A stretch of DNA of 64,000 nt from IMG/VR virus record IMGVR_UViG_3300035180_001778, positions 1-64,000 of that record; one strand, given 5' to 3'. Below, one piece after another: positions 3,969 to 57,404 of this stretch (its first letter is position 1; each line of letters begins with the position of its first letter). The notes below the pieces were generated by a model that was not told where the DNA came from, did not search any database, and saw only the letters and a list, made by a program, of their open reading frames with translations. Made by a program: the position numbers and the translations under genes.

Positions 3969-3996
3969 GTTGATCCGAATCCAGGTCGGACTGTAG
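3969..3996 (+). promoter_or_regulatory. Class I promoter-like motif
   Basis: GTTGATC-N16-TGTAG-N7-ATG 4004. Confidence 0.8.
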
Positions 3997-4003
3997 AGGC
4001 TAC

Positions 4004-4690
4004 ATGAAGCACACCGTTCTGGTCATACTCTCTGGTTTTGTCCTCGGTTGCGGCACGGACTACACGGTCCCGTGGCCCGACACCACCTCCAGCTCGTCTT
4101 CGACGGCCTCCAGCTCGTCTTCGACGACTTCATCCAGCTCCTCGGCTTCCTCCAGCTCCGGCACGGGCGGCGAAGGTGGAACCACGGTCTCCGTGTCGTC
4201 CAGCTCCAGCTCCTCGGGTACGGGCGGCTCCAGCGAGACCTCGTCCGGTACGGGCGGCACGGGAGGGACGTCTGGACTCGGCGGAGCTGGGGGTGAGATG
4301 GGGACGACGGGTGGGATGGACGGAGGGACGAGCGATACCAGCTCGTCGACCTCCGTTTCGGCGTCTTCGTCTTCGGGTGGCGGATTCTGCGCGACGGATG
4401 GGGATCTCTGTCCCGACGGAGTCTGCCTCGACGAAGTCTGCCTGCCCCATGTGCCCGTCGTCTGTGCTGTTCCGCAGCCTGGCGGCGGGTACTACACGGT
4501 GCTCGGGTGCTACGGGTCGGGGGATACTTCCCCAAACGGGTACAAGCTCTACCAGGGGAAGTGGAACGACCCGATGAGGAAGCTCCTCTGCTCGGGTGAC
4601 CCGGCCGACCTCGGCTTCTGCAAGCACGGAAGCATCTGCACGGCAGAGAGCAAGGTCGGCGGATGGTTCATCGAGGGGACCTGCTTCTAG
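4004..4690 (+). CDS. Lipoprotein with Ser/Gly/Thr low-complexity linker and Cys-rich C-terminal domain
   Basis: Signal peptide with lipobox VLGC; SSSSSGTGG repeats; CPDGVC and further Cys. Confidence 0.8.
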   Translation: MKHTVLVILSGFVLGCGTDYTVPWPDTTSSSSSTASSSSSTTSSSSSASSSSGTGGEGGTTVSVSSSSSSSGTGGSSETSSGTGGTGGTSGLGGAGGEMGTTGGMDGGTSDTSSSTSVSASSSSGGGFCATDGDLCPDGVCLDEVCLPHVPVVCAVPQPGGGYYTVLGCYGSGDTSPNGYKLYQGKWNDPMRKLLCSGDPADLGFCKHGSICTAESKVGGWFIEGTCF

Positions 4691-5124
4691 GCCCGCTTCC
4701 CGCCGTGAAGATGCGCGCGCCCTGCGTTCATCAGCATCTTCACGGCGACAGCCTTCGCCACATCGACGTTGAAGGCTTCGGCCCGATCGAGAGTCCGAAT
4801 GAAGGAGTCCGCGACTTCTTCTTCGGCGCTCGTGAGAACGGGTAGCCCCATCGAGCGCATCTTCTCGGCCTTATCGCACTCCGAGAAGAGAGTCCCATCC
4901 CGAAACGATTCCCAAAACTCGGCCAGCTCGCCGACCTCGTTCATCGTCATCACGGCAGCTCGGATGAGGATGCCGATCGGGCCCGCGATCTGAGTTGCCG
5001 TCAAGCCCTCCATGAGCTTCTCACGGAAGCCCTTCTTCGTCGAGTTCTCGACGACAAGGTCCTTGAGGTTGTTGAGGATGCTGAGGCCCTTGATGAAGGA
5101 CTCGGGAGAGGACATGTCTAGCAT
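4687..5124 (-). CDS. MazG-like nucleotide pyrophosphohydrolase
   Basis: GELAEFWE...EEEVADSFIR...VDVAKAVAVKM..N..R..LHG pattern. Confidence 0.75.
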   Translation of the reverse strand: MLDMSSPESFIKGLSILNNLKDLVVENSTKKGFREKLMEGLTATQIAGPIGILIRAAVMTMNEVGELAEFWESFRDGTLFSECDKAEKMRSMGLPVLTSAEEEVADSFIRTLDRAEAFNVDVAKAVAVKMLMNAGRAHLHGGKRA

Positions 5125-5924
5125 GGGGCGGGACTACACCGCCCCATGCTGTCCAGCTCAGTGCATGGTGGGGGTGTCGGTCGAGGGGCTTGAGCCCTGA
5201 AGAGCCGGTAGCGATGAAACCGGACCAGCTCGACCGGAAGGATCTGCACAAGGGCCGTCGACTTTGCGCAGTCGAGGATGCATTGAGCAATCACACCATC
5301 GATTTGCGTCAGGCTCAGACCAACCAACTCGTTGGCGATGCCAGGAGCGTTGTACTTCATGCCCTGAACTTGCGCGGTGCTGCTATTCGACTGGGGCGCC
5401 ATCTCTTGAAACATCTTGTCCAAGGTGTCCAGGTGCGTCTGAATGCTCTCCAGGTCCTCGACGAACCGCTCCGGAACGACATGCACGATGTCCGCGAGGT
5501 CCTCGGGGATTCCCTTGGAGCTGCCCACGAAGACCAAAGTGTGCGTGTCGCACGGATCCAAGGTGCGCCGGCTCGCCTTGTCCCGAATGTGGCGATGAGC
5601 TTCCGGGTCCTGAAGCCAGCGATCTCCGTCGAGGATGATGTAGATCCGACGGAAGTCGTCGGACTGGGGGAGCGAAAGAAAGAACTTTCGAAAGCGGACC
5701 GGCACCAAGCGGACCGGGGGTCGCACCCCTTGCGCAAGATACTCGCGCAGAGGAACAAGACCGCGTTCGGAGTTGAACACCTCGATCCTCGTGTGGTTCT
5801 CGGGGTCTGTCGTATCCGCCGCCTTCATCCCATTCAAGATGCGGAGCAAAGCCCCTTCCTCCGCATTGACGTAGATGTGCGGGAGCATGCCGCGAAGCAG
5901 TCGAACGAATGCGTCCTTGTCCAT
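5118..5924 (-). CDS. Hypothetical protein (weak likeness to N-terminal half of Ycf46-type AAA+ proteins, no Walker A)
   Basis: 268-aa ORF; GGTGTA motif 10 nt upstream. Confidence 0.65.
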   Translation of the reverse strand: MDKDAFVRLLRGMLPHIYVNAEEGALLRILNGMKAADTTDPENHTRIEVFNSERGLVPLREYLAQGVRPPVRLVPVRFRKFFLSLPQSDDFRRIYIILDGDRWLQDPEAHRHIRDKASRRTLDPCDTHTLVFVGSSKGIPEDLADIVHVVPERFVEDLESIQTHLDTLDKMFQEMAPQSNSSTAQVQGMKYNAPGIANELVGLSLTQIDGVIAQCILDCAKSTALVQILPVELVRFHRYRLFRAQAPRPTPPPCTELDSMGRCSPAPC

Positions 5925-5964
5925 GGCTCTAGGTTACACCACGGACCCCCAAGACGACCCCAAA

Positions 5965-6792
5965 TCAGTCGTCGTCTTCGAGGAAGGGCCTCTGTAGAAC
6001 CTCGAACGCCGTCGGGAGCTTCGCATGCTCCGCAGCTCGAATCGCCGCAGTACGGGCGTTTGCTTGAGGGGCAGGCACAGCCCTGGAGGTGTGCTCGATG
6101 AAGCTCGGACGGGGCGCGGGTTCGTCAACCGAGCGGGTGCTCCGATCCGAGAAGATGACCTGCCCGTTTCGGGTTCGTCCGATCTCTCGCATGTTGGCCC
6201 CAACCAGCTCTCGACGGAACGCGGTCTGATCCGTCGGGGGGCGCGTGACATTGAAGCGCGGCTGGCTGGCTGCCCCCATTCCCGAAGGCCTCGCTTGCTG
6301 CACAGGGGGATCGTAATCCAGCTCCCCGGTCGAGAAATCGATGTCGAGGCTTCCTCGCCGCCCGGTATCCCTCGCCACAGCCCCACCCCAGATGTCCTCC
6401 AGGCTCCCCAGGGACGCCGCCGGGTCCTCAGCGGGCTCATCTTCGGAGTCGAAGGAGGCTGCATACTCACGCCGAAAGACGTTCCTGTCCTCTCGGGGAG
6501 CCCGAGGAACGGGCATGCGCTGCGTGTAGCCTTCGGCGGCCCTCATCTCTCGGAGGGCGCTGCTCGATAGGAGCATCTCGGGGGTGAGGTCGGGGAGCTG
6601 TTGACGGATCGCAGCTTGACTCGCGGTTCGGGCCATTGTTGCTGGTCGTTGTAGCTTGACTCGCGGTTCGTGTTGCTTCTGAGCGAGAAGCTGACGCAAG
6701 GAGCCTTCAAGACAGGAGCAAGCTCCCGCGATGTGGTCCTCCCAATAGATCATCTGATGACAGCTCTTGCATTGAGCAATGACGGTGGCCAT
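5965..6792 (-). CDS. Hypothetical protein with N-terminal CxxC and C-terminal tag (PTAFEVLQRPFLEDDD)
   Basis: 275-aa ORF with Cys pairs. Confidence 0.7.
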   Translation of the reverse strand: MATVIAQCKSCHQMIYWEDHIAGACSCLEGSLRQLLAQKQHEPRVKLQRPATMARTASQAAIRQQLPDLTPEMLLSSSALREMRAAEGYTQRMPVPRAPREDRNVFRREYAASFDSEDEPAEDPAASLGSLEDIWGGAVARDTGRRGSLDIDFSTGELDYDPPVQQARPSGMGAASQPRFNVTRPPTDQTAFRRELVGANMREIGRTRNGQVIFSDRSTRSVDEPAPRPSFIEHTSRAVPAPQANARTAAIRAAEHAKLPTAFEVLQRPFLEDDD

Positions 6793-6840: not shown

Positions 6841-6846
6841 GGTGTA
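6841..6846 (+). promoter_or_regulatory. Class II motif GGTGTA (representative)
   Basis: 10 nt before ATG 6857. Confidence 0.65.
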
Positions 6847-6856: not shown

Positions 6857-7246
6857 ATGTGGCAAGAGACGGAAGACGACTTGGGGTTCCCTGTTTCCTA
6901 CGTGGCCCCCGCAGCAAAAGTCCCGTCTGTGAAGAGACCTTCCCGCACCAAAAAACCCGTCCCTGTTCCTGGAAACCCCAAGAACAAGTTCGATCACCGG
7001 CTCTCGGATGTGCGGGCTCCCGCTCTCACGGACCCTTGTTGGGTGGGGTGGACCGCCCCCATCTCCAAGTACTTGTCGGAACCTCGGACGTGGCCCCAGC
7101 TCGAAGCGTGGCGGAAGACGTCGGGGGTCTCCTCTGCCCTTCTACGGCATGGTCTCGCATGGCTCGAAGAGATGGGGCACGCGAGGTCGTACTCTCAGAA
7201 GGACGTCATCTACTGGGCTTCAAACATCACAGATTGTAGCGTTTGA
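6857..7246 (+). CDS. Hypothetical protein
   Basis: GGTGTA at 6841, 10 nt before ATG. Confidence 0.7.
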   Translation: MWQETEDDLGFPVSYVAPAAKVPSVKRPSRTKKPVPVPGNPKNKFDHRLSDVRAPALTDPCWVGWTAPISKYLSEPRTWPQLEAWRKTSGVSSALLRHGLAWLEEMGHARSYSQKDVIYWASNITDCSV

Positions 7247-8270
7247 GGCTCTTCTCCAGCATCTCGCTCTGACGTGAAGAGAGGGGCTTCTTGTCCCTCA
7301 TCAGGGTGTTGACGTTCTTCGCGAAGTTCGCGACCCACATGTCATCCTGCTCCGTTGCTGTGTCGATGAGCTTGATGCAGCGAATCCGCAATTTGGTGAT
7401 GCGCTCTTCCTCCTCGAACTTGGATCGGGCCCCCTGTTGCTTCTCGGCCAACAGCCTGGAGATCTCCGCCGGCTGCGACATCAAGAGACGGTAGCGAGCG
7501 AACCCCTTTTCGAGGGTGGCACTTTGAGCCGGGGATAGGTTCCAGGTGGTGCCCGCTCGTTCGAGCCTTGTTGCGATATCCCGAGCGAAGTTGTGCATCC
7601 ATGCGTCGTCGGAGACTTCCGCAGCACGGGCAAGAAGCCTTGCTCGGTCGATGAAGACTCGCTTCTCGGTGCGAGCTTCTTGGTCGTGCTCGTAGGGCCG
7701 GTTTGCAGCTCGTGACATGGCCTGTCGAACGGCCTGTCGAAATGGGCTCAGAGAGAAGGGGGTTGTCACCATGATGGTCTGCTTTCCTTTATCACCCCCA
7801 AAAAGCACAGCTTCATGGGCGCCCCACTCGACCGTAGGGAAAGTTTCGTCGAATACGTGATCTGCGTCGACCAACGGGTCTTCAGAATACCCCAAAGTCA
7901 CATGAGGCTTGAACTCGGGCCATTTCTTCGAGAAATCGACCCCGGCTGAGTCGAAGGCGTCCTGGAGAACTCGGTGGAAGTCGTGAAGGGCGTTGGAGTC
8001 CACCAGAGCGATCATGGGGGTCTTCTTCCCCTCCTGAGAAGGGAAAGTTGCCGCTCGACTCGTCTGCACTGAGAATGGCCTGGTCTTCGAGGCTACATCG
8101 TACAGCACACGAATGGCCTCGGTCAGAGTCTCAATGGGCACATCGTCCCCCAGATGGAGCAGCGTGATGTGCGCCTGATCCATGGGTTCCGGATTCCCAA
8201 ATCCCTTGAGGTCGATCTGCTTCAAGAGTTGAGCAGTCTCGGGCGGTACACGAAGTCTGATCATGGCCAT
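7227..8270 (-). CDS. 2H phosphoesterase (2'-5' RNA ligase-like) with C-terminal helical extension
   Basis: Two HxT motifs: AHITLLHL and PHVTLGY. Confidence 0.8.
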   Translation of the reverse strand: MAMIRLRVPPETAQLLKQIDLKGFGNPEPMDQAHITLLHLGDDVPIETLTEAIRVLYDVASKTRPFSVQTSRAATFPSQEGKKTPMIALVDSNALHDFHRVLQDAFDSAGVDFSKKWPEFKPHVTLGYSEDPLVDADHVFDETFPTVEWGAHEAVLFGGDKGKQTIMVTTPFSLSPFRQAVRQAMSRAANRPYEHDQEARTEKRVFIDRARLLARAAEVSDDAWMHNFARDIATRLERAGTTWNLSPAQSATLEKGFARYRLLMSQPAEISRLLAEKQQGARSKFEEEERITKLRIRCIKLIDTATEQDDMWVANFAKNVNTLMRDKKPLSSRQSEMLEKSLKRYNL

Positions 8271-8303
8271 CGTGTATAGGGTTTTTTTAGGAAGATCCTC
8301 AGT

Positions 8304-9047
8304 GTGATCCTGAACCTTCCTCCGTCCGCTGGGCTTGCTCGTGAGCAGGCGATCCGAGCACTCGTCGCAGACGGGACCTTCGACCCTATTCTGTGGTCCA
8401 CGGTCACCTCCGACCATGGCGAGCACCACGCCGAGTTCCAGGTCTTCTCGGATGCCCTCAAAATCGAGGGCATCCGGATCAACGCTTCCGCCGAGACAGA
8501 GCAACACCTCGCGGATCTTCTCGGCTGCTCTCTGCTCACCCCGAAGCTGGCGGATCTCATCTGGGCGCAGAAGTCCGTCTCTTTGGAGCCGTCGATTCAG
8601 CCGTTCGATTCTTCCACGGCGGCGATGCTCGCACACAGCTCACGGATCGATGCAGCTCTTGCCGCTCAAGGCAACCCCCAGGGCATCGTGTGCAACGTCG
8701 GCAAGCACTGGGTCATCGACAACGCGATTCTCTCCCACCCGGGCTTCGTCGAGAACTACGGCTGGCACTTCGAGGGCGTGGGGTTCAAGGGCATCCGAGG
8801 GGAAGCCAATGTCTCTCTCACGAAGGACTCCAAGGGGCGCTTCGTCCGCGTCATTCAGGGTTGTGGGTGGCAACACAACATGGCGCACACGGACTACAGC
8901 CAGACGGTCACCCTCGTCTCGTTGGGCTGCACGGTCGACGGTCAGGACATGCACCTGTTCGACGTGTTCCGGAGCCCGGAGCTGGCGCCCCTCGTGAGCC
9001 ACAACGGAGCGCTGAAGCTCGTGCGTCTTCCTGGCGTGGGCCAATGA
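8304..9047 (+). CDS. Hypothetical protein (NYGWH...HN.AHTDYSQ motif)
   Basis: 247-aa GC3-rich ORF ending at a terminator. Confidence 0.75.
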   Translation: MILNLPPSAGLAREQAIRALVADGTFDPILWSTVTSDHGEHHAEFQVFSDALKIEGIRINASAETEQHLADLLGCSLLTPKLADLIWAQKSVSLEPSIQPFDSSTAAMLAHSSRIDAALAAQGNPQGIVCNVGKHWVIDNAILSHPGFVENYGWHFEGVGFKGIRGEANVSLTKDSKGRFVRVIQGCGWQHNMAHTDYSQTVTLVSLGCTVDGQDMHLFDVFRSPELAPLVSHNGALKLVRLPGVGQ

Positions 9048-11548: not shown

Positions 11549-11576
11549 CTACAGCAAGAGGGTGGCCGGGATCAAC
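11549..11576 (-). promoter_or_regulatory. Class I promoter-like motif
   Basis: N16; N7 to ATG 11541. Confidence 0.8.
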
Positions 11577-12897
11577 CGCAGTCGTAGATGGCCCCGGTTT
11601 CCCGCGTGTGTATCCTCCCGTTTTTCGGCGAGAGGGTCAACCTCGCCCCCTTGGGGTAGCGAGTCAGAGCGTCGGGGACAAGCAGGATCGGGACGCAGTG
11701 CTCCATCGCCACCAGAGCCAGGTGCGCGAGCCTTCCTCCCGCTTGCGTGATGACGGCCTTCGACTTCATCACGGCTTCGAGGTTCTTGGGGTCGAGGTCG
11801 GACAGAACGAGGATGTCCTTGCCGACCTCCCCCGTCACATCCTCCCCCGAGACGACGACACCACACTCCCAGTTGCCGAGCTTCCGTTGAAGGTCGAAGC
11901 GTGCAGTCCAGGAGGCATCCTTGACCAGGCCCTCGTAAGCCGACTTGAGGGTCTGCCAGGCTCCGAGAACCCAGTCCGTGTGGTTGACATCGTCCCCCGG
12001 CATCTTCATACCCGGACTGGAGATACACTTCCACGGCGGGGCAAGGTGGCTCAGCGACGTGTTCCGGAGGGCCCAGTTCTCGAAGGGTGCCCGCGGGACC
12101 TTGATCGTCGACCCGTCCTCCAAGGGCAGCTCGAACGTATCGTCGCCAGCTTGAAGCACCACCTGAGCCCCGATGGTGATGCACTTCATCGAGAAGGCAG
12201 CGATCTCCTTCCGATCCTCTTCGTCCTCCTTGGCCCGCTTGGCAGCAATGGCCTGCTTATCGTCGTCCGTGAGGGGCGGCGGGGTGATCTTCTTGGTGTG
12301 GGCCTGGTAGCGACGCGACCAGCCATACAGCTCCAGCTTGCGCCCGGCGGCCAGGAAGTCCTTGAGAGCGGCATCCGTCGTCCGGTTGACTGGCCACCAA
12401 TGCGGCGGCTCTCCGGTCGGTTCGAAGATGAGGGAGTCCCCCTCGACATCGAAGACGCGCTCATCCTTGAGCCCGTAGTGAGCGACGCGCTGACGTCCGA
12501 TCTCGTGGAGCTGTGCCTTGCCTGCCGTGGTAGCCCGGTCGCCTGCCACGGCACCCTTCGGCCAATCCTCGGGGCCGAAGTTCGTGACCTTGGCTCTCGG
12601 CCGCCACCATCGTCCCTCTTTACGGATGCGGCCGGCGTAGATGTACCGGGCCTGCTTTTGGAAGTCCGCCGCGTCATCGTCGACCGGCTCCAGGCCCACC
12701 GTCTCGTTGCCGACGAGCTTGGTCTTCCCGTTGAGGATGAGCTTGGCGTAGTACTCGGCTTGTCCCGGCTCCCCGCCCATCAGGCCTTCCGTGATGAAGC
12801 GCCACGCAGCATCAGGGCGCTCCTCCAGAAAGAAGTCCCTGGCGATGCGGGTGAAGTCGTCTCCGTCGATCCGAAAGTGCATTTGGCCGGTCGTCAT
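11572..12897 (-). CDS. Protein with C-terminal PEP-utilising enzyme mobile (phospho-His swivel) domain
   Basis: AVITQAGGRLAHLALVAMEHCVPILLV matches the swivel-domain His motif. Confidence 0.7.
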   Translation of the reverse strand: MTTGQMHFRIDGDDFTRIARDFFLEERPDAAWRFITEGLMGGEPGQAEYYAKLILNGKTKLVGNETVGLEPVDDDAADFQKQARYIYAGRIRKEGRWWRPRAKVTNFGPEDWPKGAVAGDRATTAGKAQLHEIGRQRVAHYGLKDERVFDVEGDSLIFEPTGEPPHWWPVNRTTDAALKDFLAAGRKLELYGWSRRYQAHTKKITPPPLTDDDKQAIAAKRAKEDEEDRKEIAAFSMKCITIGAQVVLQAGDDTFELPLEDGSTIKVPRAPFENWALRNTSLSHLAPPWKCISSPGMKMPGDDVNHTDWVLGAWQTLKSAYEGLVKDASWTARFDLQRKLGNWECGVVVSGEDVTGEVGKDILVLSDLDPKNLEAVMKSKAVITQAGGRLAHLALVAMEHCVPILLVPDALTRYPKGARLTLSPKNGRIHTRETGAIYDCG

Positions 12898-13173: not shown

Positions 13174-13201
13174 CTACAAAAACACCAGGCAGAGGATCAA
13201 C
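13174..13201 (-). promoter_or_regulatory. Class I promoter-like motif
   Basis: N16; N7 to ATG 13166. Confidence 0.8.
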
Positions 13202-13214
13202 CAGGGAAAATCTG

Positions 13215-13242
13215 GTTGATCCTCCTCGGGCTTCCTGTGTAG
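13215..13242 (+). promoter_or_regulatory. Class I promoter-like motif
   Basis: N16; N8 to ATG 13251. Confidence 0.8.
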
Positions 13243-15988: not shown

Positions 15989-15994
15989 TACACC
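15989..15994 (-). promoter_or_regulatory. Class II motif GGTGTA (representative)
   Basis: 10 nt before ATG 15978. Confidence 0.65.
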
Positions 15995-16069
15995 GACTTC
16001 GACAGGTAGCTTCTAGTATGTTAGATCACGTACTAGACGGAAACTTGAAAGTCTCCTCTCCAGATAGAC

Positions 16070-16585: not shown

Positions 16586-16619
16586 GAAGGCGTCTACACC
16601 AGAAGTGAAGGCGTTCTAG

Positions 16620-17450: not shown

Positions 17451-17470
17451 TGTCGGTGTAGATGTGGGAG

Positions 17471-19294: not shown

Positions 19295-20209
19295 TCACAC
19301 CTTGGGGGGCATCTCGAACTTGAAGTACTTCGGCGGGCCGATCACTCGTCGAAGTACCTCGTTGAATTTCTCGACGAGGTCCCATGCGTTGTTCGGCCGG
19401 AGGTGTTGCATGGGAGACAGGCACTCCCTCAAGAACCTCTGAATGGGCTCCGGTGTGGTATCCGGCATCGCGTTCGTGGTGACGTCCCCGCCTTGCAGGG
19501 CGACCATGCACTTGGCCAGCATGTAGATGTCCGTCGCCGCCGTCGGGATCTCCTTGGCGAGAATCTCGGGAGCGTAGAAGCTACGCCAAGGGGCGGACAT
19601 GGCCCGAACCTTGTTCCGCCGTGTGTTCGCGTTGGTGACGGCGTAAGACCAGTCGATCAGCTTGGCCCCGTGGTCGGCCGGATGGATCAGCAAGTGCGGA
19701 GGGAGGACCGCTCCGTGAAGGACGTTCTTCTCATGGACGTACCCGAGGCCTTCCAGCCCGCGCTTGAACATCCAGACCATGTTCTGGTACTCGATGCCCG
19801 CGGGGTAGGCCTTCAGGATGTCCGCGACGGAGACGTGCTCCCCAAGCCAGGGAAAGACGTTGATCCGTTTCCCCTCCCGTTCGTTGTGGAAGGAGTAGCT
19901 GAGCTTGGAAAGGTAGCGGAGGAACCCAGCGTTCGCCTCTTCTGCGGGGAAGAGGTGCCGGATGACGTCCGCCTCGTGCTCGACGAGGTCGTTGACGTCG
20001 ACCCCATGAGAGACCTTCAGGGCCGCAGGGCGGCCGTTGTAGGTGCCTCGGTAGATGTCGCAGAGGTCCCCTTCCGCAACCTTCATGTCGAAGGTGAAGA
20101 TTGCGGTGTCCCCCTCGAGGTTACCATCGTCATCCGCCATGAGCGCTTCCCACGCATTGGTGGCGTGACGTGGTCGCGTGGGGGGCAGAATAATCGTGAT
20201 GAGGTCCAT
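19295..20209 (-). CDS. Atypical Ser/Thr protein kinase-fold protein with N-terminal tag (TNAWEALMADDD)
   Basis: AALK, HEAD, LHGAVLPPHLLI, LIDWSYA, YAPE, TDIYMLA subdomains. Confidence 0.8.
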   Translation of the reverse strand: MDLITIILPPTRPRHATNAWEALMADDDGNLEGDTAIFTFDMKVAEGDLCDIYRGTYNGRPAALKVSHGVDVNDLVEHEADVIRHLFPAEEANAGFLRYLSKLSYSFHNEREGKRINVFPWLGEHVSVADILKAYPAGIEYQNMVWMFKRGLEGLGYVHEKNVLHGAVLPPHLLIHPADHGAKLIDWSYAVTNANTRRNKVRAMSAPWRSFYAPEILAKEIPTAATDIYMLAKCMVALQGGDVTTNAMPDTTPEPIQRFLRECLSPMQHLRPNNAWDLVEKFNEVLRRVIGPPKYFKFEMPPKV

Positions 20210-22545: not shown

Positions 22546-22573
22546 CTACAGCCGGGGCGGGTTTCGGATCAAC
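22546..22573 (-). promoter_or_regulatory. Class I promoter-like motif
   Basis: N16; N7 to ATG 22538. Confidence 0.8.
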
Positions 22574-24251: not shown

Positions 24252-24278
24252 GTACAAGAGACGCCCCCGAGGATCAAC
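24252..24278 (-). promoter_or_regulatory. Class I promoter-like motif (TGTAC, N15)
   Basis: Spacer contains a C5 run; N7 to ATG 24244. Confidence 0.65.
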
Positions 24279-25523: not shown

Positions 25524-25603
25524 TTTTCTTCTTGGGGGTCGACTTCGGTAGATGAGAGATACACCAGATACCCTTCATCTACCGAAGTTTTCTTCTTGGG
25601 GTC
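25524..25603. repeat. Direct repeat / inverted repeat cassette enclosing a GGTGTA motif
   Basis: TTTTCTTCTTGGGG(G)TC direct repeats flank the 14-bp IR ACTTCGGTAGATGA / TCATCTACCGAAGT. Confidence 0.85.
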
Positions 25604-26987: not shown

Positions 26988-26998
26988 GGGGGTCTCCA

Positions 26999-27715: not shown

Positions 27716-27756
27716 GGTGTTTCTTCTACACCAACCATGGTGTGCTTTTCACACAA
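27715..27756. promoter_or_regulatory. Two tandem NrtR-operator-like palindromes overlapping the nrtR start and promoter
   Basis: TGGTGT-N7-ACACCA (27715-27733) and TGGTGT-N7-ACACAA (27738-27756). Confidence 0.65.
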
Positions 27757-29684: not shown

Positions 29685-29708
29685 GGTGGATCATACACCG
29701 AAATGACC

Positions 29709-30438: not shown

Positions 30439-30444
30439 TACACC
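30439..30444 (-). promoter_or_regulatory. Class II motif GGTGTA (representative)
   Basis: 10 nt before ATG 30428. Confidence 0.65.
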
Positions 30445-30924: not shown

Positions 30925-30946
30925 ACCAACAGGTACACCAAAAAGC

Positions 30947-37259: not shown

Positions 37260-37280
37260 GCCCTCGGTTAGTACACCAAG

Positions 37281-37778: not shown

Positions 37779-37807
37779 GGGGGCGGACTACACCGACTGA
37801 GGCAGCT

Positions 37808-40246: not shown

Positions 40247-40274
40247 CTACATCTGGCGGGGCCGTGGGATCAAC
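40247..40274 (-). promoter_or_regulatory. Class I promoter-like motif
   Basis: N16; N7 to ATG 40239. Confidence 0.8.
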
Positions 40275-40518: not shown

Positions 40519-40564
40519 GACCCCTCTTACACCGTTTTGGGGGTAGAACAGGGCCAATTTTACG

Positions 40565-43167: not shown

Positions 43168-43224
43168 GGGCAGATCCCTACACCGACAGCGGCCCGAATC
43201 GCCAGGATTTCCAGGGCCGTGTGA

Positions 43225-43251
43225 CGTTTTTGGGGTCCGACCCCAAAAACG
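43225..43251. repeat. 27-bp palindrome abutting a GGTGTA motif
   Basis: CGTTTTTGGGGTC-c-GACCCCAAAAACG. Confidence 0.9.
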
Positions 43252-43256
43252 GTGTA
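43251..43256 (+). promoter_or_regulatory. Class II motif GGTGTA (representative)
   Basis: 10 nt before ATG 43267. Confidence 0.65.
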
Positions 43257-46199: not shown

Positions 46200-46589
46200 T
46201 TAGGCGACGTCCTCAAGCAGATCCGGAACATCGTCCTCCCCGAAGGATGGACCATCAAAATCGGACCCGTCGAGATCAATGCCCCGGTCCGCGTCATCCG
46301 CAAGAAAACCAGGTAGAAGCCCATCGTGGACTTCCCGGTGACAGCGGCAGCAAAGAAGCACGCACCTGTCTAGCTCGGGTCGGATCACCTTCCAAGAGGT
46401 CATCCGACCCGAGATGGTGAAGTCCTTCTCTCGGGGGTCCACATGGTGGAAGTCGAAAGCTGTGACGCAGCGATCGTACCCACACTTGGGGTTCATGCAG
46501 CGACCCCCAAGATACGAGACAGCCTTTTCGCGTAGCGCTCGACGGCGTAGCGATGTTTTCAACCGACGATCGGTGTAAGGATCAGCCAT
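46200..46589 (-). CDS. HNH endonuclease with acidic tail
   Basis: GGRC..CGY...FDFHH.DP..K...C.LLC..CHREVH. Confidence 0.75.
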   Translation of the reverse strand: MADPYTDRRLKTSLRRRALREKAVSYLGGRCMNPKCGYDRCVTAFDFHHVDPREKDFTISGRMTSWKVIRPELDRCVLLCCRCHREVHDGLLPGFLADDADRGIDLDGSDFDGPSFGEDDVPDLLEDVA

Positions 46590-47462: not shown

Positions 47463-47662
47463 GACTCCGTTTCAAATTCAAGGCGGCGGAGCAGGCGCAG
47501 ACTCTCTTCACGTCGTCAAAGACGACCCCCGTTGTGGGTGACGTGATCAAGGTGTACGACAAGGCGACGTGGTCGGGGAACAAGCCCACCTTGGTGCGGG
47601 TCGTCGAGATCGTCACGCACATCAAAGGCGGGGACATCTTCATCATTGAATATCTGGTGTAG
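47459..47662 (+). CDS. Small hypothetical protein
   Basis: GTGA overlap; its stop coincides with a GGTGTAG motif. Confidence 0.6.
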   Translation: MRLRFKFKAAEQAQTLFTSSKTTPVVGDVIKVYDKATWSGNKPTLVRVVEIVTHIKGGDIFIIEYLV

Positions 47663-49022: not shown

Positions 49023-49043
49023 GCGGTGTAGCCGGGGGAGGGC

Positions 49044-49976: not shown

Positions 49977-51225
49977 CGAACTTGACCTTCCCAGGGATGG
50001 CGATGTGGAGCCAGTGTCGGACTTGCTCCGGCACTCGGCCGGGACCGTAGGCGACCATGAGCCCAATGGCCTCGCAGAAGGCCTCCTCGGGGTTCTTGTT
50101 GGCGTAGGCTGTGATGGGTGTCGAGGGGACTCGAACGGTCTTGGTGCCCTCTGAGAGGAGCTTCTCGAAGTCGTCTCGGTTGAAGCGGTCGTGCAGGTAG
50201 GCACGGTCGTGAGACAGCGCATCGAGCTGGAGCGCAAGAACGGGGTCCGATGTCTCCAGGTGCTTCATCAGCGAATGCGTGAAATGTCCGACGTTGGGGG
50301 GCCACTTGCTCAACAGCTCGGCGATGTCGAGTTCCTTCAGGTCCCCGCTGATCACGGCGTACCAGAAGTCGCTCCCATCCTTGCCGAGGTGCTTGAACAG
50401 GTGGTGGCCCATCTCGTGAGCCATCACATGGGTTGCCCACTCGGGCCGTTCTGAGATCAAGGAGGCCGTCGAGAGAGTGATGGTGCCGTCTCCGTTGTAG
50501 CGGCCCCCCTCATCGAGGGTCATCCCGAAGTCCAGGATGACCGGGAGCTGGTTCTGGATCAACCAGGGGAGAATCTTGGCGGCTTTGGTCTTGTAGTCCT
50601 GGAGCCCCTGCTTCAGCTTCGAGAGAACCTTCTCATTCCAATGCGTATCGGACAAGTCGGTTCGATCGGACTTGAACCCGTGCATGATCACCTGGAATCC
50701 TTCCAAGGTGATCGTCTCATCCTTCGGGACATCAACAGGGATTTCGGGCGCCATCCCATTTGTCTTGAGCATCTCGAAGACTTCACGCATCGCTGTCCAG
50801 AAGACTCGGGCTTTGGCTTGAACGCGAGCCTTCCACTTGGGGGCATTGCGCTCGAACTCCAAGAACCGGCTCTCCTCGGAGTAATACTCGTTGGCAAACC
50901 CGATGGGCATGCTCTTCAGCTCCGACATCCATGTCCAAGCGACCGCACGAGTCTTGTGGTCGATCCAAGAGACATCGTGTCCTGTTGCCTTGGAAATGTC
51001 GTACTTGACGGCGTCCCCAAGGAAGTGCTTGAAGAACATGTCATCGAACCGATTGGAGTAGATCCGAATCGCTACCCGCAGCTCATGCGCTGTCTTGTAG
51101 TCTTTGACCAGGGGTATGTTCTTGACCAGCGTCAAGAAGTCCTTCCGGAGCTTCTCGATGAGAGCAAGGTCGACCATGACCTTGTCGGCGATCAGGAACC
51201 TGGCGAGAACTCGGTGAGCGATCAT
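49960..51225 (-). CDS. Zincin metallopeptidase-like protein with N-terminal RVLARF motif
   Basis: HEMGH; PITAYANKNPEEAFCE. Confidence 0.8.
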   Translation of the reverse strand: MIAHRVLARFLIADKVMVDLALIEKLRKDFLTLVKNIPLVKDYKTAHELRVAIRIYSNRFDDMFFKHFLGDAVKYDISKATGHDVSWIDHKTRAVAWTWMSELKSMPIGFANEYYSEESRFLEFERNAPKWKARVQAKARVFWTAMREVFEMLKTNGMAPEIPVDVPKDETITLEGFQVIMHGFKSDRTDLSDTHWNEKVLSKLKQGLQDYKTKAAKILPWLIQNQLPVILDFGMTLDEGGRYNGDGTITLSTASLISERPEWATHVMAHEMGHHLFKHLGKDGSDFWYAVISGDLKELDIAELLSKWPPNVGHFTHSLMKHLETSDPVLALQLDALSHDRAYLHDRFNRDDFEKLLSEGTKTVRVPSTPITAYANKNPEEAFCEAIGLMVAYGPGRVPEQVRHWLHIAIPGKVKFARTLP

Positions 51226-52958
51226 CGGAAGGACACCGGGCGCAGGAAGTAGTAGGCAAACCACTTCTCGCTCTCATACCCCTTCATCGCGTCCAAGAGG
51301 TCGTACATCTTGTCGCTCGGGGCCTCTCGTCGGATTTCTGCGTCCGCTGCCTTGATGCGGCGTTCGAGATTGTCGAGCCAGTGATCGAGGGCTTGGGCCA
51401 TCTTGGGATCGCTCATGTCCTGGGGGACCATCTCCGCCGTGACCTCCCGGGCGTACCGCGTCCCCTTGAAGAAGAACTGGAACCACTTGGTGTGTTGGCG
51501 CTCGCCGATGGCATCCGTGAGCTGCACGAAGGCCTTCCCGGGTGTGCCCTGCCCCCGAAGCTCCTGGTTGGCCCGCTGAGTCAACTGGAGCAGGTTGTCG
51601 AGCCACTTGTCGAGGTCCTTCGACATCGTTCCGGGGTCAACCCAGGAATCGGAGTTGTCGTCGTAGTAGCTCGCTTCCTTGTACTTCGACATGAAGCGGG
51701 CGAGGATCCGTTCCGACTGGTCATGCTCTTCGGGTTTCCCGTGGCAGCTACAGCTCTCGCACCCCTGCTTGAGGGACGCCGCCTTCTCGTGGAGCTTGTC
51801 CATGACCGTCCCATCCTTCAGATATGTGTCCTCCAGTCCGGGGACGAGATACTGGCTCTTCAGCGTGGCAGGCTCGTGGCCCACGGCTTCCGCTGTGACT
51901 TCGAGGGCTTCCTTGAACTCTTCCTTGAGCTGCTTCTCCCGCTTCTTGGGGTCTTCGGGGAGCTTGCCGCCCTTCTTCCTGGAGGCCTTGAGCTGGTCCT
52001 GCATCTCGACGTTCGCGTGCAACCCACGGATGTCCTTTGCCGAGATGTCAAATTCCTTCAGGTAGGCGTTCACCTTCTCGGCTGAGACCTTGCCCCCGTC
52101 CCACTCGAAGATACAGGACGTCTCGTTCTCGGCCGCCTCACAGGCATCCTTGAGCGCCTTGGTGATGGTCGAGTCGGTCACCTTCTTGACGTGCTTGACG
52201 CCGGACTTGCCGACGTACTTGATGGTCGCCCCGCCCTTGCTGAAGGTGATGTGGTCCTTCTGCCAGCCCGTGACCCCGAAGTGCCCGTCGTCCGCGCTCT
52301 CGTCGTTCCCGACCCGCTCGAACGTGTGATCCATCAGCATCACGGCGAGGGCCGTGAGCATCTTCTCGGGATCGCTCGACTTCAGGTCCTTCTTGGCCTT
52401 CGAGCGGACGTCGTCGATCTTGCCCCGGAGCTTCTCGATTCGCTTCGCCTTCTCCCGGTTCCGGTTGGCGATCTGCTTGTCGGAGTACTCGTAGACGGTC
52501 ATATCCTCGCCGTCTTGAGTCTTGACCTTCTTTTTCTTCTTGTAGCGGGCCGCGACTTTTTCGGTGATACCCATCATCTTGAGTTCGATCGGGGAGTAGA
52601 ACTGGAACACAGGGTTGGGAATGGTCACGGTCGACGCCGAAGAGATGTCGTCCCGCTGGAACACGTAGGGATTCCCGATGGTGCCTCCCTTGGGGTCGCG
52701 GGATGTCCACAGCTCGGACTTCCCATACACTCCCACGAAGACGATCCAAGAGCCTCCGTCGATGACCCCGAGGTAGCCTCCAACCTCTTTGGGGTTGGAG
52801 TAAATCTCCGTCAGGCCCGCGGTCAGAGCAGGGTGGTCCGCCATCTCCGGCGGTAGAGGCATCCCCCCGGAGCTTCCCCTTGCCACGACGGATCGTAGAG
52901 CGGCCTCCCGGCGGGAGACGACATGTTGAGCAGCTACTCGGAGGGACCGGCTGTGCAT
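51222..52958 (-). CDS. Type IB DNA topoisomerase embedded in a multidomain protein
   Basis: FERVGN, YVGKSG, KDIRGLHAN, VGHEPATLKSQY (R/K/R/H/Y catalytic set). Confidence 0.85.
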   Translation of the reverse strand: MHSRSLRVAAQHVVSRREAALRSVVARGSSGGMPLPPEMADHPALTAGLTEIYSNPKEVGGYLGVIDGGSWIVFVGVYGKSELWTSRDPKGGTIGNPYVFQRDDISSASTVTIPNPVFQFYSPIELKMMGITEKVAARYKKKKKVKTQDGEDMTVYEYSDKQIANRNREKAKRIEKLRGKIDDVRSKAKKDLKSSDPEKMLTALAVMLMDHTFERVGNDESADDGHFGVTGWQKDHITFSKGGATIKYVGKSGVKHVKKVTDSTITKALKDACEAAENETSCIFEWDGGKVSAEKVNAYLKEFDISAKDIRGLHANVEMQDQLKASRKKGGKLPEDPKKREKQLKEEFKEALEVTAEAVGHEPATLKSQYLVPGLEDTYLKDGTVMDKLHEKAASLKQGCESCSCHGKPEEHDQSERILARFMSKYKEASYYDDNSDSWVDPGTMSKDLDKWLDNLLQLTQRANQELRGQGTPGKAFVQLTDAIGERQHTKWFQFFFKGTRYAREVTAEMVPQDMSDPKMAQALDHWLDNLERRIKAADAEIRREAPSDKMYDLLDAMKGYESEKWFAYYFLRPVSFR

Positions 52959-54841: not shown

Positions 54842-54844
54842 GGT

Positions 54845-55852: not shown

Positions 55853-55886
55853 GTATCTACGGAGAGGGCCCTATCAATACTTTCCG

Positions 55887-55914: not shown

Positions 55915-55921
55915 TAGGGAC

Positions 55922-56271: not shown

Positions 56272-56294
56272 TCCCGGATCCCTTCCTCCTGTAG
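56267..56294 (+). promoter_or_regulatory. Class I promoter-like motif
   Basis: N16; N7 to ATG 56302. Confidence 0.8.
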
Positions 56295-56301
56295 GACTCC
56301 C

Positions 56302-56595: not shown

Positions 56596-56969
56596 TCAAG
56601 AAGTTGACCAAGAAGCAAAAGGCGGCTCAAGAGGTCGCCTTCAATGCCGGGGTGGTCGAGATCGGTACCCGTCTGGGTGGGGTCTCTCAGGGCAAGGAAT
56701 GGCTCCCCAACTACTACGAGATCACGACCCGAGCAGGGTATCTCAGCATTGCCACCTACGGTAACTGGGTCGCCTGCAAGTTCAACGACCCTGACGCGGC
56801 GAAGGCTGTCGTGGGGACATCTGGGCTCAACCCATTCTCCGGGAAGTGGAACCAGAACTACTTCGACGTGCCCGTCAAAGACGCCTTGGAAGACTTCGAA
56901 CGAGTTCTCCGGAGGATTTTGCCTCCCGAGGTTGATCGTCTCGCCCCCGTTCGTGTACTGGCTTCGTAA
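56592..56969 (+). CDS. Tandem paralog D
   Basis: AFNAG..EI..RLGG...CKFNDP.AA...GKWN. Confidence 0.8.
   Translation: MIKKLTKKQKAAQEVAFNAGVVEIGTRLGGVSQGKEWLPNYYEITTRAGYLSIATYGNWVACKFNDPDAAKAVVGTSGLNPFSGKWNQNYFDVPVKDALEDFERVLRRILPPEVDRLAPVRVLAS
56931..56958 (+). promoter_or_regulatory. Class I promoter-like motif (TGTAC), with leader
   Basis: N16; 45 nt and an SD before ATG 57004. Confidence 0.6.
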
Positions 56970-57003
56970 ACGGGCTTTGCCCCATCTCACAGAGGAGTTT
57001 CGA

Positions 57004-57363
57004 ATGTTCATCCCCGATGCAACCCACACCGCGCTGTTCCAGGCCATGAGCGACCTCGACAAGAGCCGCACAGCACTCAAGTCGGGCCAGTGGGCCGCGA
57101 AAGTGCTCACCATGCTCCTGACCTCCGCTGATGTCGGTGCCCTCGATTCGAGCATCGCGTTCCTGAAGGCGAACGCGGACAAGATCAACAAGATCCCCGG
57201 CGTTTGCGCCGAAGGTTCCGAGGCGATCGAGAAGGCGAACTCCGCCCTGGAGAGGGCCCGCTCCAAGATCCCCAACACCACGCCCCCGGATCCCCGCGGC
57301 TTCGAGTCCTGTGCGGCTCCGAGCGAGCCGGTGGACGAGTGGGCATTCATCCCCCCGACCTGA
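57004..57363 (+). CDS. Hypothetical helical protein
   Basis: GAGGAG SD; TGTAC-variant promoter upstream. Confidence 0.7.
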   Translation: MFIPDATHTALFQAMSDLDKSRTALKSGQWAAKVLTMLLTSADVGALDSSIAFLKANADKINKIPGVCAEGSEAIEKANSALERARSKIPNTTPPDPRGFESCAAPSEPVDEWAFIPPT

Positions 57364-57369
57364 CCTTCG

Positions 57370-57397
57370 GTTGATCGCGTCGAGCTTGGCCTTGTAG
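57370..57397 (+). promoter_or_regulatory. Class I promoter-like motif
   Basis: N16; N7 to ATG 57405. Confidence 0.8.
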
Positions 57398-57404
57398 GAC
57401 CCCC

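What the first reader, a model, noticed from the sequence alone, without database searches (positions are those of the whole stretch)
3969..57404. 23 copies of GTTGATC-N16-TGTA(G/T/C), mostly 7 nt from the start codon: a dedicated promoter class making probably leaderless mRNAs
SEEN: 10 plus-strand and 13 minus-strand copies (listed as features). The spacer is 16 nt in 22 of 23. The distance from the TGTAN core to ATG is 7 nt in 16 cases, 8-11 nt in six, and 45 nt (with an SD) in one. KNOWLEDGE: bipartite -35/-10 elements with fixed spacing are the signature of sigma-factor promoters, and a start codon about 6-7 nt past the -10 hexamer is typical of leaderless transcripts. INFERENCE: one sigma factor (phage-encoded or a host alternative sigma) drives a regulon of small, probably early genes that are translated without SD leaders.
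Basis: partly seen in the sequence, partly recalled or inferred. Interest (0 to 1): 0.7.

Follow-up and report, generated by a model that had tools for sequence, protein, structure and literature searches.

The report
Repeated leaderless-type promoter of huge phage
A two-box DNA signal (GTTGATC, 16 bases, TGTA) that occurs 24 times in this window and 87 times in an uncultivated phage genome of over 350 kb is very probably a promoter class that starts transcription at or next to the start codon of small, fast-evolving accessory genes. The signal is clear and clean, but it is a new variant of a known kind of phage regulation.

Summary
GTTGATC-N16-TGTA occurs 24 times in the window (chance 0.01) and 87 times in the 350-kb phage record (0 in the control). 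The spacer is 16 in 87 of 90 copies, and only about 5 credible one-mismatch copies exist.

The sites are intergenic and co-oriented with the next gene. The ATG lies 8 nt after TGTA in about half, and some sites precede tRNA genes, so this is a transcription signal. In a relative about 89% identical in DNA the two boxes are 97% conserved, against 81% for the spacer.

More distant relatives keep the architecture with other -35 boxes: GTTGATT-N16-TGTA and TTGAAC-N17-TGTA.

No phage RNA polymerase and no sigma region 2 gene was found, only a sigma region 4-like tandem-HTH protein. The best reading is a -35/-10-type promoter for host RNA polymerase giving leaderless or nearly leaderless mRNAs for small, lineage-specific, probably early genes. 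Which sigma reads it is unresolved, and no RNA data exist.

Verdict: new variant of a known kind, moderate interest.

The parts
363..389 (-). class-1 promoter-like site; ATG at 351, 11 nt after TGTA; ORF runs off the window start
3969..3995 (+). class-1 site; ATG at 4004 (8 nt after TGTA); 228-aa ORF; T-run just upstream
11550..11576 (-). class-1 site; ATG at 11541 (8 nt); 79 aa
13175..13201 (-). class-1 site; ATG at 13166 (8 nt); 90 aa; back to back with the next site
13215..13241 (+). class-1 site; ATG at 13251 (9 nt); 161 aa, AAA_33 kinase-like
22547..22573 (-). class-1 site; ATG at 22538 (8 nt); 122 aa
23172..23198 (-). class-1 site; ATG at 23163 (8 nt); 77 aa
23685..23711 (-). class-1 site; an ATG 9 nt after TGTA opens only 9 codons; the next ORF (59 aa) starts at 23649
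24253..24278 (-). variant with 15-nt spacer; ATG 8 nt after TGTA, ORF shorter than 40 aa
27977..28003 (-). class-1 site; ATG at 27964 (12 nt); 54 aa
31123..31149 (-). class-1 site; ATG at 31111 (11 nt; A kept at motif position 36); 54 aa
34006..34032 (-). class-1 site; ATG at 33997 (8 nt); 41 aa
34273..34299 (-). class-1 site; ATG at 34264 (8 nt); 78 aa
34765..34791 (-). class-1 site; ATG at 34753 (11 nt; C-A at positions 35-36); 152 aa
35549..35575 (-). class-1 site; ATG at 35539 (9 nt); 250 aa
39649..39675 (-). class-1 site with no ORF of 40 aa or more within 50 nt; lies near the 3' end of a called small ORF
40248..40274 (-). class-1 site; ATG at 40239 (8 nt); 78 aa
40565..40591 (+). class-1 site; ATG at 40600 (8 nt); 83 aa
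44250..44276 (+). class-1 site; ATG at 44285 (8 nt); 164 aa
45058..45084 (+). class-1 site; ATG at 45093 (8 nt); 98 aa
48343..48369 (+). class-1 site; ATG at 48378 (8 nt); 113 aa
55887..55913 (+). class-1 site; ATG at 55922 (8 nt); 84 aa
56267..56293 (+). class-1 site; ATG at 56302 (8 nt); 97 aa
56931..56957 (+). class-1 site with a 46-nt leader carrying GAGGAG before the ATG at 57004; 119 aa
57370..57396 (+). class-1 site; ATG at 57405 (8 nt); 82 aa

Best explanation
GTTGATC-N16-TGTA is a class of strong promoters of the bipartite (-35 box / -10 box) sigma-70-family type. It is used by the host's multisubunit RNA polymerase, because the phage record shows no polymerase of its own.

TTGATC acts as the -35 element. 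TGTA(G) is the core of the -10 region. Transcription most likely begins at motif position 36, the 9th base after TGTA. In about half of the sites that base is the A of the ATG, and in most others it lies within 1-3 nt of the ATG. The mRNAs are therefore leaderless or nearly so and are translated without a Shine-Dalgarno sequence.

The class drives about 70 small, lineage-specific accessory genes and some tRNA genes on one arm of the genome. Its probable role is an early or host-takeover programme.

Status of the steps:
- Shown: sequence, geometry, location, orientation and conservation.
- Inferred: promoter function, the +1, the timing, and the polymerase and sigma used.

I lean (about 50%) to a host-encoded sigma, most simply the primary one. 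It would read class 1 through -35 plus TGTA, and read the second class (YGGTGTA-N10-ATG) through an extended -10. A phage-specified specificity factor is the main alternative.
For: - Counts: 24 copies in the window against 0.01 expected. 87 in the genome against 0 in the control. The spacer is 16 in 87 of 90. Copies are near-invariant, with 87 exact against about 5 credible one-mismatch copies.
- Location: 62 of 87 sites are fully intergenic although about 79% of the genome is called coding (binomial p about 1e-23). 19 more overlap only gene ends, and none lies deep inside a same-strand gene.
- Orientation and distance: the ATG of a co-directional ORF lies 8 nt after TGTA in 45 sites, 9 nt in 8 and 11 nt in 11.
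- Transcription rather than translation: copies stand 12 and 51 nt before tRNA genes.
- Start site, indirect evidence: where the ATG is not at position 36, positions 35-36 still tend to be C-A (A in 18 of 39). C at -1 of the ATG is 87% for class-1 genes against 40% for genes without a TGTA promoter.
- SD control: 5 of the 6 sites I read with the ATG 20 or more nt downstream carry GAGG/AGGA before it, and the adjacent sites have no room for one.
- Footprint: in G003 (about 89% nt identity) 28 orthologous sites keep 299 of 308 box positions, against 364 of 448 spacer positions (Fisher p about 3e-12).
- Same architecture with other boxes in relatives, always with the ATG 8 nt after TGTA: G011 has GTTGATT-N16-TGTA (16 against 0). 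G009 has TTGAAC-N17 or N16-TGTA (27 against 1).
- No RNA polymerase beta, beta-prime or T7-type gene and no DxDGD motif. There are no canonical TTGACA/TATAAT promoters that could serve instead.
- Gene content: the first genes have a median of 93 aa. Only 10 of 66 have a homologue in four related phages, against 39 of 84 for class 2. They include ArdC-like plus M78, GmrSD_N-like, HD and kinase-like proteins.
- Published precedent: a -10 motif 6-7 bp before the ORF gives leaderless mRNA in Deinococcus-Thermus (PMC12340547). In D. deserti, 47% of TSSs lie exactly at the start codon (PMC4007540). Phage programmes that use a -10/-35 class and an extended -10 class are described for P23-45 and T4 (PMC4124052).
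Against: - No transcript ends could be examined, because no RNA run was listed.
- TGTA is not a canonical -10. If TA is taken as -12/-11, the ATG of class 1 lies 2 nt too close. If TGTAGG is the hexamer, G stands at -11. The two classes differ by 2 nt in the TGTA-to-ATG distance (8 against 10), so one register cannot make both canonical.
- One site, 249685(-), is followed by a tRNA that begins only 5 nt after TGTA (Rfam 53.9 bits). A +1 at position 36 would truncate it.
- Near-invariance and lineage-specific box variants are unusual for promoters read by a primary sigma.
- Relatives G012 and G014 have class 2 only, so class 1 is a subclade addition.
- The host is unknown. In the five bacterial genomes searched, the motif is at chance level.
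Confidence: 0.72

Rival explanations
1. The sites have the same promoter function, but the -35 box is read by a dedicated phage-specified factor rather than by a host sigma. Candidates are an unrecognised sigma, a split sigma, or a sigma-appropriation or activator protein. That would make class 1 a middle rather than immediate-early class.
For: - 87 exact copies against about 5 credible one-mismatch copies, with a rigid 16-nt spacer.
- Each phage lineage has its own box, invariant within the genome: GTTGATC, GTTGATT or TTGAAC with spacer 17.
- Class 1 is absent from G012 and G014, which manage with class 2 alone.
- The phage clade encodes a sigma region-4-like tandem-HTH protein under very strong purifying selection: 34 nt changes but 1 aa change against G003, where the median orthologue is 91% identical. 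Its fold matches -35-binding sigma-4 domains.
Against: - No Sigma70_r2 in G000, G001, G002 or G003.
- Both recognition helices of the sigma-4-like protein are invariant in 24 family members. They are near-identical in the G014 and G015 homologues, with conservative changes only. G014 lacks class 1, so the helices do not co-vary with the box.
- The seven genes shared only by the class-1 subclade show no DNA-binding or sigma-like feature.
- All box variants keep TTGA, the core of the universal -35.
Confidence: 0.3
2. GTTGATC is an operator for a phage regulator, an array of asymmetric sites like the 'stoperators' of cluster A mycobacteriophages. The promoter proper is only the TGTA region.
For: - There are many near-identical asymmetric sites in short intergenic regions, oriented with transcription.
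- A conserved HTH protein exists in the phage.
- Class 2 shows that TGTA with a GG extension can stand alone, without any upstream box.
Against: - The box sits at one fixed distance (16 nt) from TGTA and at the place and spacing of a -35 element.
- It starts with TTGA.
- Class-1 sites mostly lack the GG extension that class 2 has, as expected if the box substitutes for it as a positive element.
Confidence: 0.1
3. The sites are promoters of an unrecognised phage RNA polymerase that starts right after TGTA. The resulting 8-11-nt leaders begin with GGA(G), which serves as a short Shine-Dalgarno sequence.
For: - GGA or GAG follows TGTA in most sites.
- The 11-nt subclass reads TGTAGGAGAGGGACCATG.
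- One tRNA begins 5 nt after TGTA.
- Several very large proteins (1,078 to 2,091 aa) have no Pfam family.
- The record is about 73% complete.
Against: - No beta, beta-prime or T7-type polymerase match and no DxDGD motif in any called protein.
- A 16-nt unconserved spacer between two boxes is not how known single-unit phage polymerase promoters look.
- The GGA-to-ATG spacing of 4-5 nt is short for an SD.
- C-A is conserved at positions 35-36.
Confidence: 0.06
4. The motif is a translation signal (a start-associated sequence) or a repeated mobile or recombination element, and has no role in transcription.
For: It lies at a fixed distance from start codons.
Against: - It also precedes tRNA genes and sites without ORFs.
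- Spacers and flanks are unrelated between copies.
- Only the two boxes are conserved in the relative.
- Where the ATG is far away, a normal SD is present as well.
Confidence: 0.03

Closest known systems
Promoters of leaderless genes in Deinococcus-Thermus and Actinobacteria (-10 motif TANNNT 6-7 bp before the ORF)
   Same: A -10-type element stands a few bases before the start codon, there is no SD, and ATG dominates. With TGTAnn taken as the hexamer the gap to the ATG is 6 nt (class 1). With TAnnnn it is 6 nt for class 2. The published geometry is 6-7 bp (PMC12340547; PMC4007540).
   Different: - The -10 core is TGTA, with no conserved T at the last hexamer position.
- An invariant -35 box sits at a rigid distance.
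- Copies are nearly identical.
- The signal belongs to a phage whose host is unknown.
Temporal promoter classes of phages that use host RNA polymerase: T4 early/middle/late, and Thermus phage P23-45 with its -10/-35 class versus extended -10 class
   Same: Two classes sit in one genome, one with a -35 box and one with only an extended -10. Published cases switch between such classes through phage proteins that act on sigma region 4 or the beta flap (gp39, AsiA) (PMC4124052).
   Different: - No timing data exist here.
- No gp39 or AsiA homologue was identified.
- Both classes here sit directly on the start codon.
- That Thermus phage phiYS40 middle and late mRNAs are leaderless is recalled from memory (Sevostyanova et al. 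2007). The paper was not held.
ECF sigma promoters, for example B. subtilis sigma-W TGAAAC-N16-CGTA (recalled from memory, a lead only)
   Same: There is a short four-base -10 ending in GTA, a rigid 16-17-nt spacer, a 6-7-base -35 box, and very low degeneracy within the regulon.
   Different: - The -35 lacks the AAC signature and the -10 lacks CGT.
- No ECF-type gene (regions 2 plus 4) is present in the phage.
- 87 copies is far more than a usual ECF regulon.
Streptomyces-type sigma-70 consensus TTGACR-N18-TAGRRT (Strohl 1992, recalled from memory, a lead only)
   Same: Read as TTGATC-N18-TAGGAc, class 1 matches TTGA, the 18-nt spacing and TAGRR.
   Different: - The last T of the hexamer is not conserved.
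- In this register the ATG lies only 4 nt after the hexamer.
- Nothing ties the phage to an actinobacterial host. The tmRNA tag ANDN... points elsewhere.
Stoperators of cluster A mycobacteriophages and start-associated sequences of cluster K (recalled from memory)
   Same: There are dozens of asymmetric, oriented, near-identical short sites in intergenic regions of one phage genome.
   Different: - Here the site is bipartite with the geometry of a promoter and a fixed distance to the start codon.
- It also precedes tRNA genes.

Membership tests
sigma-70-family -35/-10 promoter | Two conserved boxes separated by 16-18 bp | tested here: met
   The spacer between GTTGATC and TGTA is 16 in 87 of 90 copies. 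That is 16 nt between TTGATC and TGTAGG, or 18 nt between TTGATC and TAGGAC.
sigma-70-family -35/-10 promoter | -35 box resembling TTGACA | tested here: met
   TTGATC matches 4 of 6 positions, and TTGA is invariant. The relatives have TTGATT and TTGAAC.
sigma-70-family -35/-10 promoter | -10 hexamer TAnnnT with A at -11 and T at -7 | tested here: inconclusive
   TA is invariant, but the fourth base after it is T in only 10 of 87 sites. The alternative register TGTAGG puts G at -11.
sigma-70-family -35/-10 promoter | Lies upstream of genes and points towards them | tested here: met
   62 of 87 sites are intergenic, 19 lie at gene ends, and none is deep in a same-strand gene. A co-directional ORF or tRNA follows.
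sigma-70-family -35/-10 promoter | Transcripts start about 7 nt after the -10 hexamer and depend on a sigma factor | not testable with these tools
   No RNA run was listed. Only indirect support exists: C-A at positions 35-36.
leaderless-mRNA gene | -10 element 6-7 bp before the start codon | tested here: inconclusive
   The gap is 6 nt if the hexamer is TGTAnn and 4 nt if it is TAnnnn. The reference geometry comes from PMC12340547.
leaderless-mRNA gene | No Shine-Dalgarno sequence in the mRNA; ATG as start | tested here: met
   With 8 nt between TGTA and the ATG there is no room for an SD downstream of any possible +1. The first start codon was ATG in 70 of the 74 sites where one was found. 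Sites with long leaders do carry an SD.
leaderless-mRNA gene | The 5' end of the mRNA is the A of AUG | not testable with these tools
   No transcript data.
ECF sigma regulon | -35 with AAC and -10 with CGT | tested here: not met
   The boxes are GTTGATC and TGTA.
ECF sigma regulon | A cognate sigma with regions 2 and 4 encoded in the genome | tested here: not met
   No Sigma70_r2 in G000-G003. The only region-4 protein lacks region 2. The record is about 73% complete, so absence is not proven.
phage-encoded RNA polymerase promoter (T7-type, phiKZ/AR9-type, crAss/YonO-type) | A polymerase gene in the phage | tested here: not met
   PF00562, PF00623 and PF00940 gave no match, and no DxDGD motif was found. 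The PF00940 control rang in no control genome, so that test is weak.
phage-encoded RNA polymerase promoter (T7-type, phiKZ/AR9-type, crAss/YonO-type) | One contiguous conserved block reaching the start site | tested here: not met
   There are two boxes with 16 unconserved bases between them.
operator or stoperator array | Position not tied to promoter geometry or to start codons | tested here: not met
   The distances to TGTA (16 nt) and to the ATG are fixed.
start-associated (translation) sequence | Associated only with protein-coding starts and present in the mRNA | tested here: not met
   The motif also precedes tRNA genes and sites without ORFs.

The most novel reading that the evidence does not exclude
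The -35 box of class 1 may be read, or its use switched on and off, by a phage-encoded factor of a kind not yet described. That factor would have diversified with the box (GTTGATC, GTTGATT, TTGAAC) within a widespread clade of 350-570-kb phages.

The clade-wide, almost invariant protein made of two sigma-region-4-like HTH domains would be part of this system. It could act as a stand-alone -35 reader, or as a beta-flap decoy that moves host RNA polymerase between the -35-dependent class 1 and the -35-independent class 2. That would make it a split or 'borrowed' sigma-4 mechanism.
Probability: 0.22. Interest if true: 0.75.

Novelty: new variant of a known kind. Interest (0 to 1): 0.5.

Why it matters
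The motif gives a ready-made regulatory map for an uncultivated clade of very large phages. It marks about 90 transcription units, corrects start codons of small genes, and separates a fast-evolving accessory (probably early, anti-defence) arm from the conserved core.

Together with the second class (GGTGTA-N10-ATG) it suggests that most promoter-proximal genes of these phages are expressed from leaderless or nearly leaderless mRNAs. That says something about the host's translation apparatus and may help to identify the host.

The lineage-specific -35 boxes offer a natural experiment on how promoter specificity evolves. The invariant 27-bp module could serve as a search key for related phages and as a portable promoter once the host is known.

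Tried and rejected
- RNA evidence: two searches for sequencing runs found only four DNA runs, from sediment and microbial-mat metagenomes. No RNA run was listed.
- Literature by sequence: searches on GTTGATC, on planctomycete and leaderless promoters, and on assembly accessions gave nothing specific.
- The phage collection gave no megablast match.
- Host identification failed:
  - The nearest bacterial PurA relatives are only 30-46% identical and spread over many phyla.
  - Atlas neighbours of PurA and of the transglycosylase domain point in different directions: viruses and Actinomycetota, Bacteroidota, Myxococcota.
  - The motif is at chance level in five bacterial genomes from those hits.
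  - Two NCBI records that carry the sigma-4-like gene are not held.
- Canonical TTGACA/TATAAT promoters: 3 against 2 in the control, and 3 against 3.5 in shuffles.
- Terminator-like hairpins: 21 against 15.1 expected, which is not convincing.
- A third, T-rich 'GTAG-TTTCT' motif seen by eye before core genes was not enriched, at 19 against 42 in the control, and was dropped.
- Sigma-4-like protein as reader of the box: the recognition helices are invariant across the clade, so there is no co-variation.
- Genes shared only by the class-1 subclade: seven were found, and none looks DNA-binding. My gene list (381 genes) misses many small ORFs, so this screen is incomplete.
- Complex prediction was not used, because a protein-DNA job gets no verdict.

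Full report
**What the window is.** The window is the first 64 kb of a 350,469-bp IMG/VR virus record (G000). The record is 'linear', CheckV estimates it 73% complete, and its GC content is 0.60.
- It carries 40 tRNA genes and a tmRNA at 242-266 kb.
- It also carries a family A DNA polymerase, helicases, a clamp-loader subunit and baseplate J.
- The window itself holds auxiliary genes: NAMPT, adenylosuccinate synthetase, topoisomerase IB, a peptidoglycan transglycosylase domain and a LigT/Acb1-like phosphoesterase.
- DNA runs that hold it come from sediment and microbial-mat metagenomes.
- G001 and G002 are other assemblies of the same phage.
- G003 (275 kb) is a collinear relative with about 89% nucleotide identity. 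It shows that the two ends of G000 are joined through about 15 kb that G000 lacks. The two motif-rich stretches (0-57 kb and 239-350 kb) therefore form one arm.

**The observation.** GTTGATC-N16-TGTA occurs 24 times in the window (10 on +, 14 on -) against 0.01 expected. It occurs 87 times in the genome against 0 for the reversed control.
- The spacer is 16 in 87 copies, 15 in 2 and 19 in 1.
- Only 11 one-mismatch copies exist, and about 5 of them look real.
Its '22 of 23 with spacer 16' corresponds to the spacer-15 copy at 24253-24278.
- The ATG lies 8 nt after TGTA in 15 of the 24 exact window sites and in 45 of 87 genome sites. It lies 9 nt after in 8 genome sites and 11 nt after in 11.
- The extended consensus is gGTTGATCs...cTGTAGGA-N4-cATG.

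**Why it is a transcription signal.**
- Location: 62 of 87 sites are fully intergenic in a genome that is about 79% coding by my calls (p about 1e-23). 19 overlap only gene ends, and none lies deep within a same-strand gene.
- Orientation: every window site points at the next ORF.
- tRNA genes: copies also stand 12 nt before a tRNA(UCA) gene and 51 nt before a tRNA-Ala gene. Others precede regions without ORFs in the tRNA array. This excludes a purely translational signal.
- Conservation: in G003, 28 orthologous sites keep 299 of 308 box positions (97%). They keep only 364 of 448 spacer positions (81%) and 858 of 1001 upstream positions (86%).

**Where transcription probably starts.** With TTGATC as the -35 hexamer, a 16-nt spacer and TGTAGG as the -10 hexamer, a canonical 6-nt discriminator puts +1 at motif position 36. 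In the 8-nt sites that is the A of the ATG.
- Independent hints: in the 39 sites whose ATG is not at position 36, position 36 is still A in 18 and position 35 is C in 21. The 11-nt subclass reads TGTAGGAGAGG-G-A-CC-ATG, which keeps A at position 36.
- C at -1 of the ATG is 87% for class-1 genes, 59% for class 2 and 40% for other genes.
- Five of the six sites I read with the ATG 20 or more nt away carry GAGG or AGGA before it. The same holds in G009 with AAGGAG. The host therefore uses SD sequences when a leader exists, and the adjacent sites have none.
- This geometry matches published leaderless promoters. The -10 motif lies 6-7 bp before the ORF in Deinococcus (PMC12340547). In D. deserti 47% of TSSs lie exactly at the start codon (PMC4007540).
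- Caveat on register: if TA is -12/-11, as in all known sigma-70 promoters, the class-1 ATG is 2 nt too close.
- Caveat on one site: at 249685(-) a well-scoring tRNA begins 5 nt after TGTA.
- No RNA run could be found.

Y-GGTGTA followed after 10 nt (range 8-13) by an ATG opening an ORF of 40 aa or more occurs 82 times, against 2 in the control. It has no conserved -35 region at all, and it is spread over the whole genome including the replication region.
- About 24 copies lie in the window.
- tRNA 5' ends follow its TGTA by 10, 11, 12, 15, 16 and 19 nt in this phage and its relatives.
- This class looks like an extended -10 promoter, with GG or GGTG replacing the -35 box.
- It is conserved in G009, G011, G012, G013 and G014 (22-30 exact matches against 0-4 in the control). 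It is not conserved in G015.

**Evolution of class 1.** The class-1 architecture exists only in a subclade, and each lineage has its own box.

| Genome | Class-1 box and spacer | Copies vs control |
|---|---|---|
| G000 | GTTGATC-N16-TGTA | 87 vs 0 |
| G003 | GTTGATC-N16-TGTA | 35 vs 0 |
| G011 | GTTGATT-N16-TGTA, with GGGT before TGTA | 16 vs 0 |
| G009 | TTGAAC-N17 or N16-TGTA | 27 vs 1 |
| G012, G014 | none detected | – |

In G000, G009 and G011 the ATG lies 8 nt after TGTA.

**Which polymerase and which sigma.**
- No beta, beta-prime or T7-type polymerase and no DxDGD motif were found. Host RNA polymerase is therefore the likely enzyme.
- No Sigma70_r2 was found in G000-G003.
- There are no canonical TTGACA/TATAAT promoters. 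At least one of the two TGTA classes must therefore be read by the unmodified host holoenzyme, unless a factor is injected with the DNA.
- The only sigma-like gene (212424-213134, minus strand, 236 aa) has an acidic N-terminus, a Sigma70_r4 domain and a second r4-like HTH.
- Its model (pLDDT 77.5) matches -35-binding sigma-4 domains of SigF, SigD, SigR, sigma-E and Taq sigma-A, with TM by target of 0.71-0.86.
- It is a core gene of a large clade. It has 693 homologues, many on contigs of 350-570 kb.
- It is under extreme purifying selection: 34 nucleotide changes but 1 amino-acid change against G003, where the median orthologue is 91% identical.
- Both recognition helices are invariant across 24 members. 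They are near-identical even in the G014 and G015 homologues, with conservative changes only.
- The helices therefore do not follow the box variants, and the protein is at best a reader of the shared TTGA. It might instead act on the beta flap, as the published gp39 and AsiA proteins do when they switch RNA polymerase from the -10/-35 class to the extended -10 class (PMC4124052). That idea is speculation.

**What the class drives.** The first genes after class-1 sites have a median length of 93 aa. Only 10 of 66 have a homologue in four related phages. For class 2 the median is 156 aa and 39 of 84 have a homologue.
- The few recognisable products are an ArdC-like anti-restriction domain with an M78 peptidase domain, a GmrSD_N-like protein, an HD-domain protein, an AAA_33 kinase-like protein and a cytidylyltransferase-like protein.
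- This is the profile of an early, host-takeover or anti-defence gene set, but timing was not measured.

**Verdict.**
- The promoter and leaderless reading is well supported by sequence and comparative evidence (about 0.7-0.8).
- 'Dedicated sigma factor' is open: host-encoded sigma about 0.5, phage-specified factor about 0.3, other about 0.2.
- Known phages and bacteria offer close parallels: leaderless -10-adjacent promoters, and phage programmes with a -35/-10 class and an extended -10 class. This is therefore a new variant of a known kind.
- What stands out is the unusual TGTA core, the near-perfect invariance of 87 copies, and the lineage-specific -35 boxes in an uncultivated huge-phage clade.

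Noticed in passing
window, TGTA box at: 2772-2777(-), 3240-3245(-), 3962-3967(-), 5135-5140(-), 5935-5940(-), 6841-6846(+), 15989-15994(-), 16595-16600(-), 17455-17460(+), 27727-27732(-), 29694-29699(-), 30439-30444(-), 30934-30939(-), 37272-37277(-), 37789-37794(-), 40528-40533(-), 43179-43184(-), 43251-43256(+), 46572-46577(+), 47656-47661(+), 49025-49030(+), 58661-58666(-), 60393-60398(-): A second promoter-like class, Y-GGTGTA followed after about 10 nt by the ATG of an ORF. It has no -35 box. There are 82 copies in the genome against 2 in the control, and it is conserved in five related huge phages.
   Followed up: yes
G000:212424-213134 (-), outside the window (L011:7424-8134): A 236-aa protein with two sigma-region-4-like HTH domains and no region 2. 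It is a core gene of a clade of 350-570-kb phages. Its recognition helices are invariant, and it differs from the G003 copy by 1 amino acid despite 34 nucleotide changes. Its fold matches -35-binding sigma-4 domains.
   Followed up: partly
G000:302161-302233 (+), outside the window: A 73-nt tRNA with anticodon UCA (Rfam tRNA, 64.7 bits), which aragorn labels SeC. Its size fits an opal-suppressor tRNA rather than a selenocysteine tRNA. It lies 12 nt after a class-1 site. Long ORFs read through with the standard code, so no recoding is claimed.
   Followed up: no
G000:242624-265701 (-), outside the window: An array of about 40 tRNA genes plus a one-piece tmRNA with tag ANDNALVPMQMAA. The relatives carry similar arrays and tags: ANDNGIPDLAIAA in G009 and ANDNGVAQARAA in G011.
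   Followed up: partly
G000:249659-249685 (-) and tRNA 249581-249654 (-), outside the window: A class-1 site whose TGTA is followed after only 4 nt by a full-length tRNA. A start at the usual position would cut the tRNA. This is unexplained.
   Followed up: partly
window 7227-8507(-), 11572-12897(-), 20209-21552(-), 25602-26999(-), 35577-37259(-), 51222-52844(-): Auxiliary genes on the accessory arm: a LigT / 2H phosphoesterase with a weak Acb1 (anti-CBASS) match, a PEP-utiliser mobile domain, adenylosuccinate synthetase, NAMPT, a peptidoglycan transglycosylase domain, and a type IB topoisomerase.
   Followed up: partly
window 13175-13241; also G000 288023-288098, 291253-291318, 297429-297484, 316916-316976, 348813-348896: Back-to-back divergent pairs of class-1 sites whose -35 boxes are 2-30 nt apart (GATCAAC...GTTGATC). 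These are compact bidirectional promoter regions.
   Followed up: no
G000:288109-288993 (+), outside the window: A class-1-driven gene with an ArdC-type anti-restriction N-terminal domain and an M78 (IrrE-like) peptidase domain.
   Followed up: no
window 5935-5950(-), 15989-16004(-) and other class-2 sites genome-wide: CTAG or CTAGA recurs a few bases after GGTGTA in many class-2 sites, for example GGTGTActagat and GGTGTAacctagag. TCTAGG is an enriched upstream 6-mer. The meaning is unknown.
   Followed up: no
G000 ends (1 and 350469) versus G003:233756-255598: The relative G003 bridges the two ends of the record with about 22 kb, of which G000 holds about 6.5 kb. The record therefore lacks at least about 15 kb there, and the two motif-rich stretches are contiguous.
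   Followed up: partly
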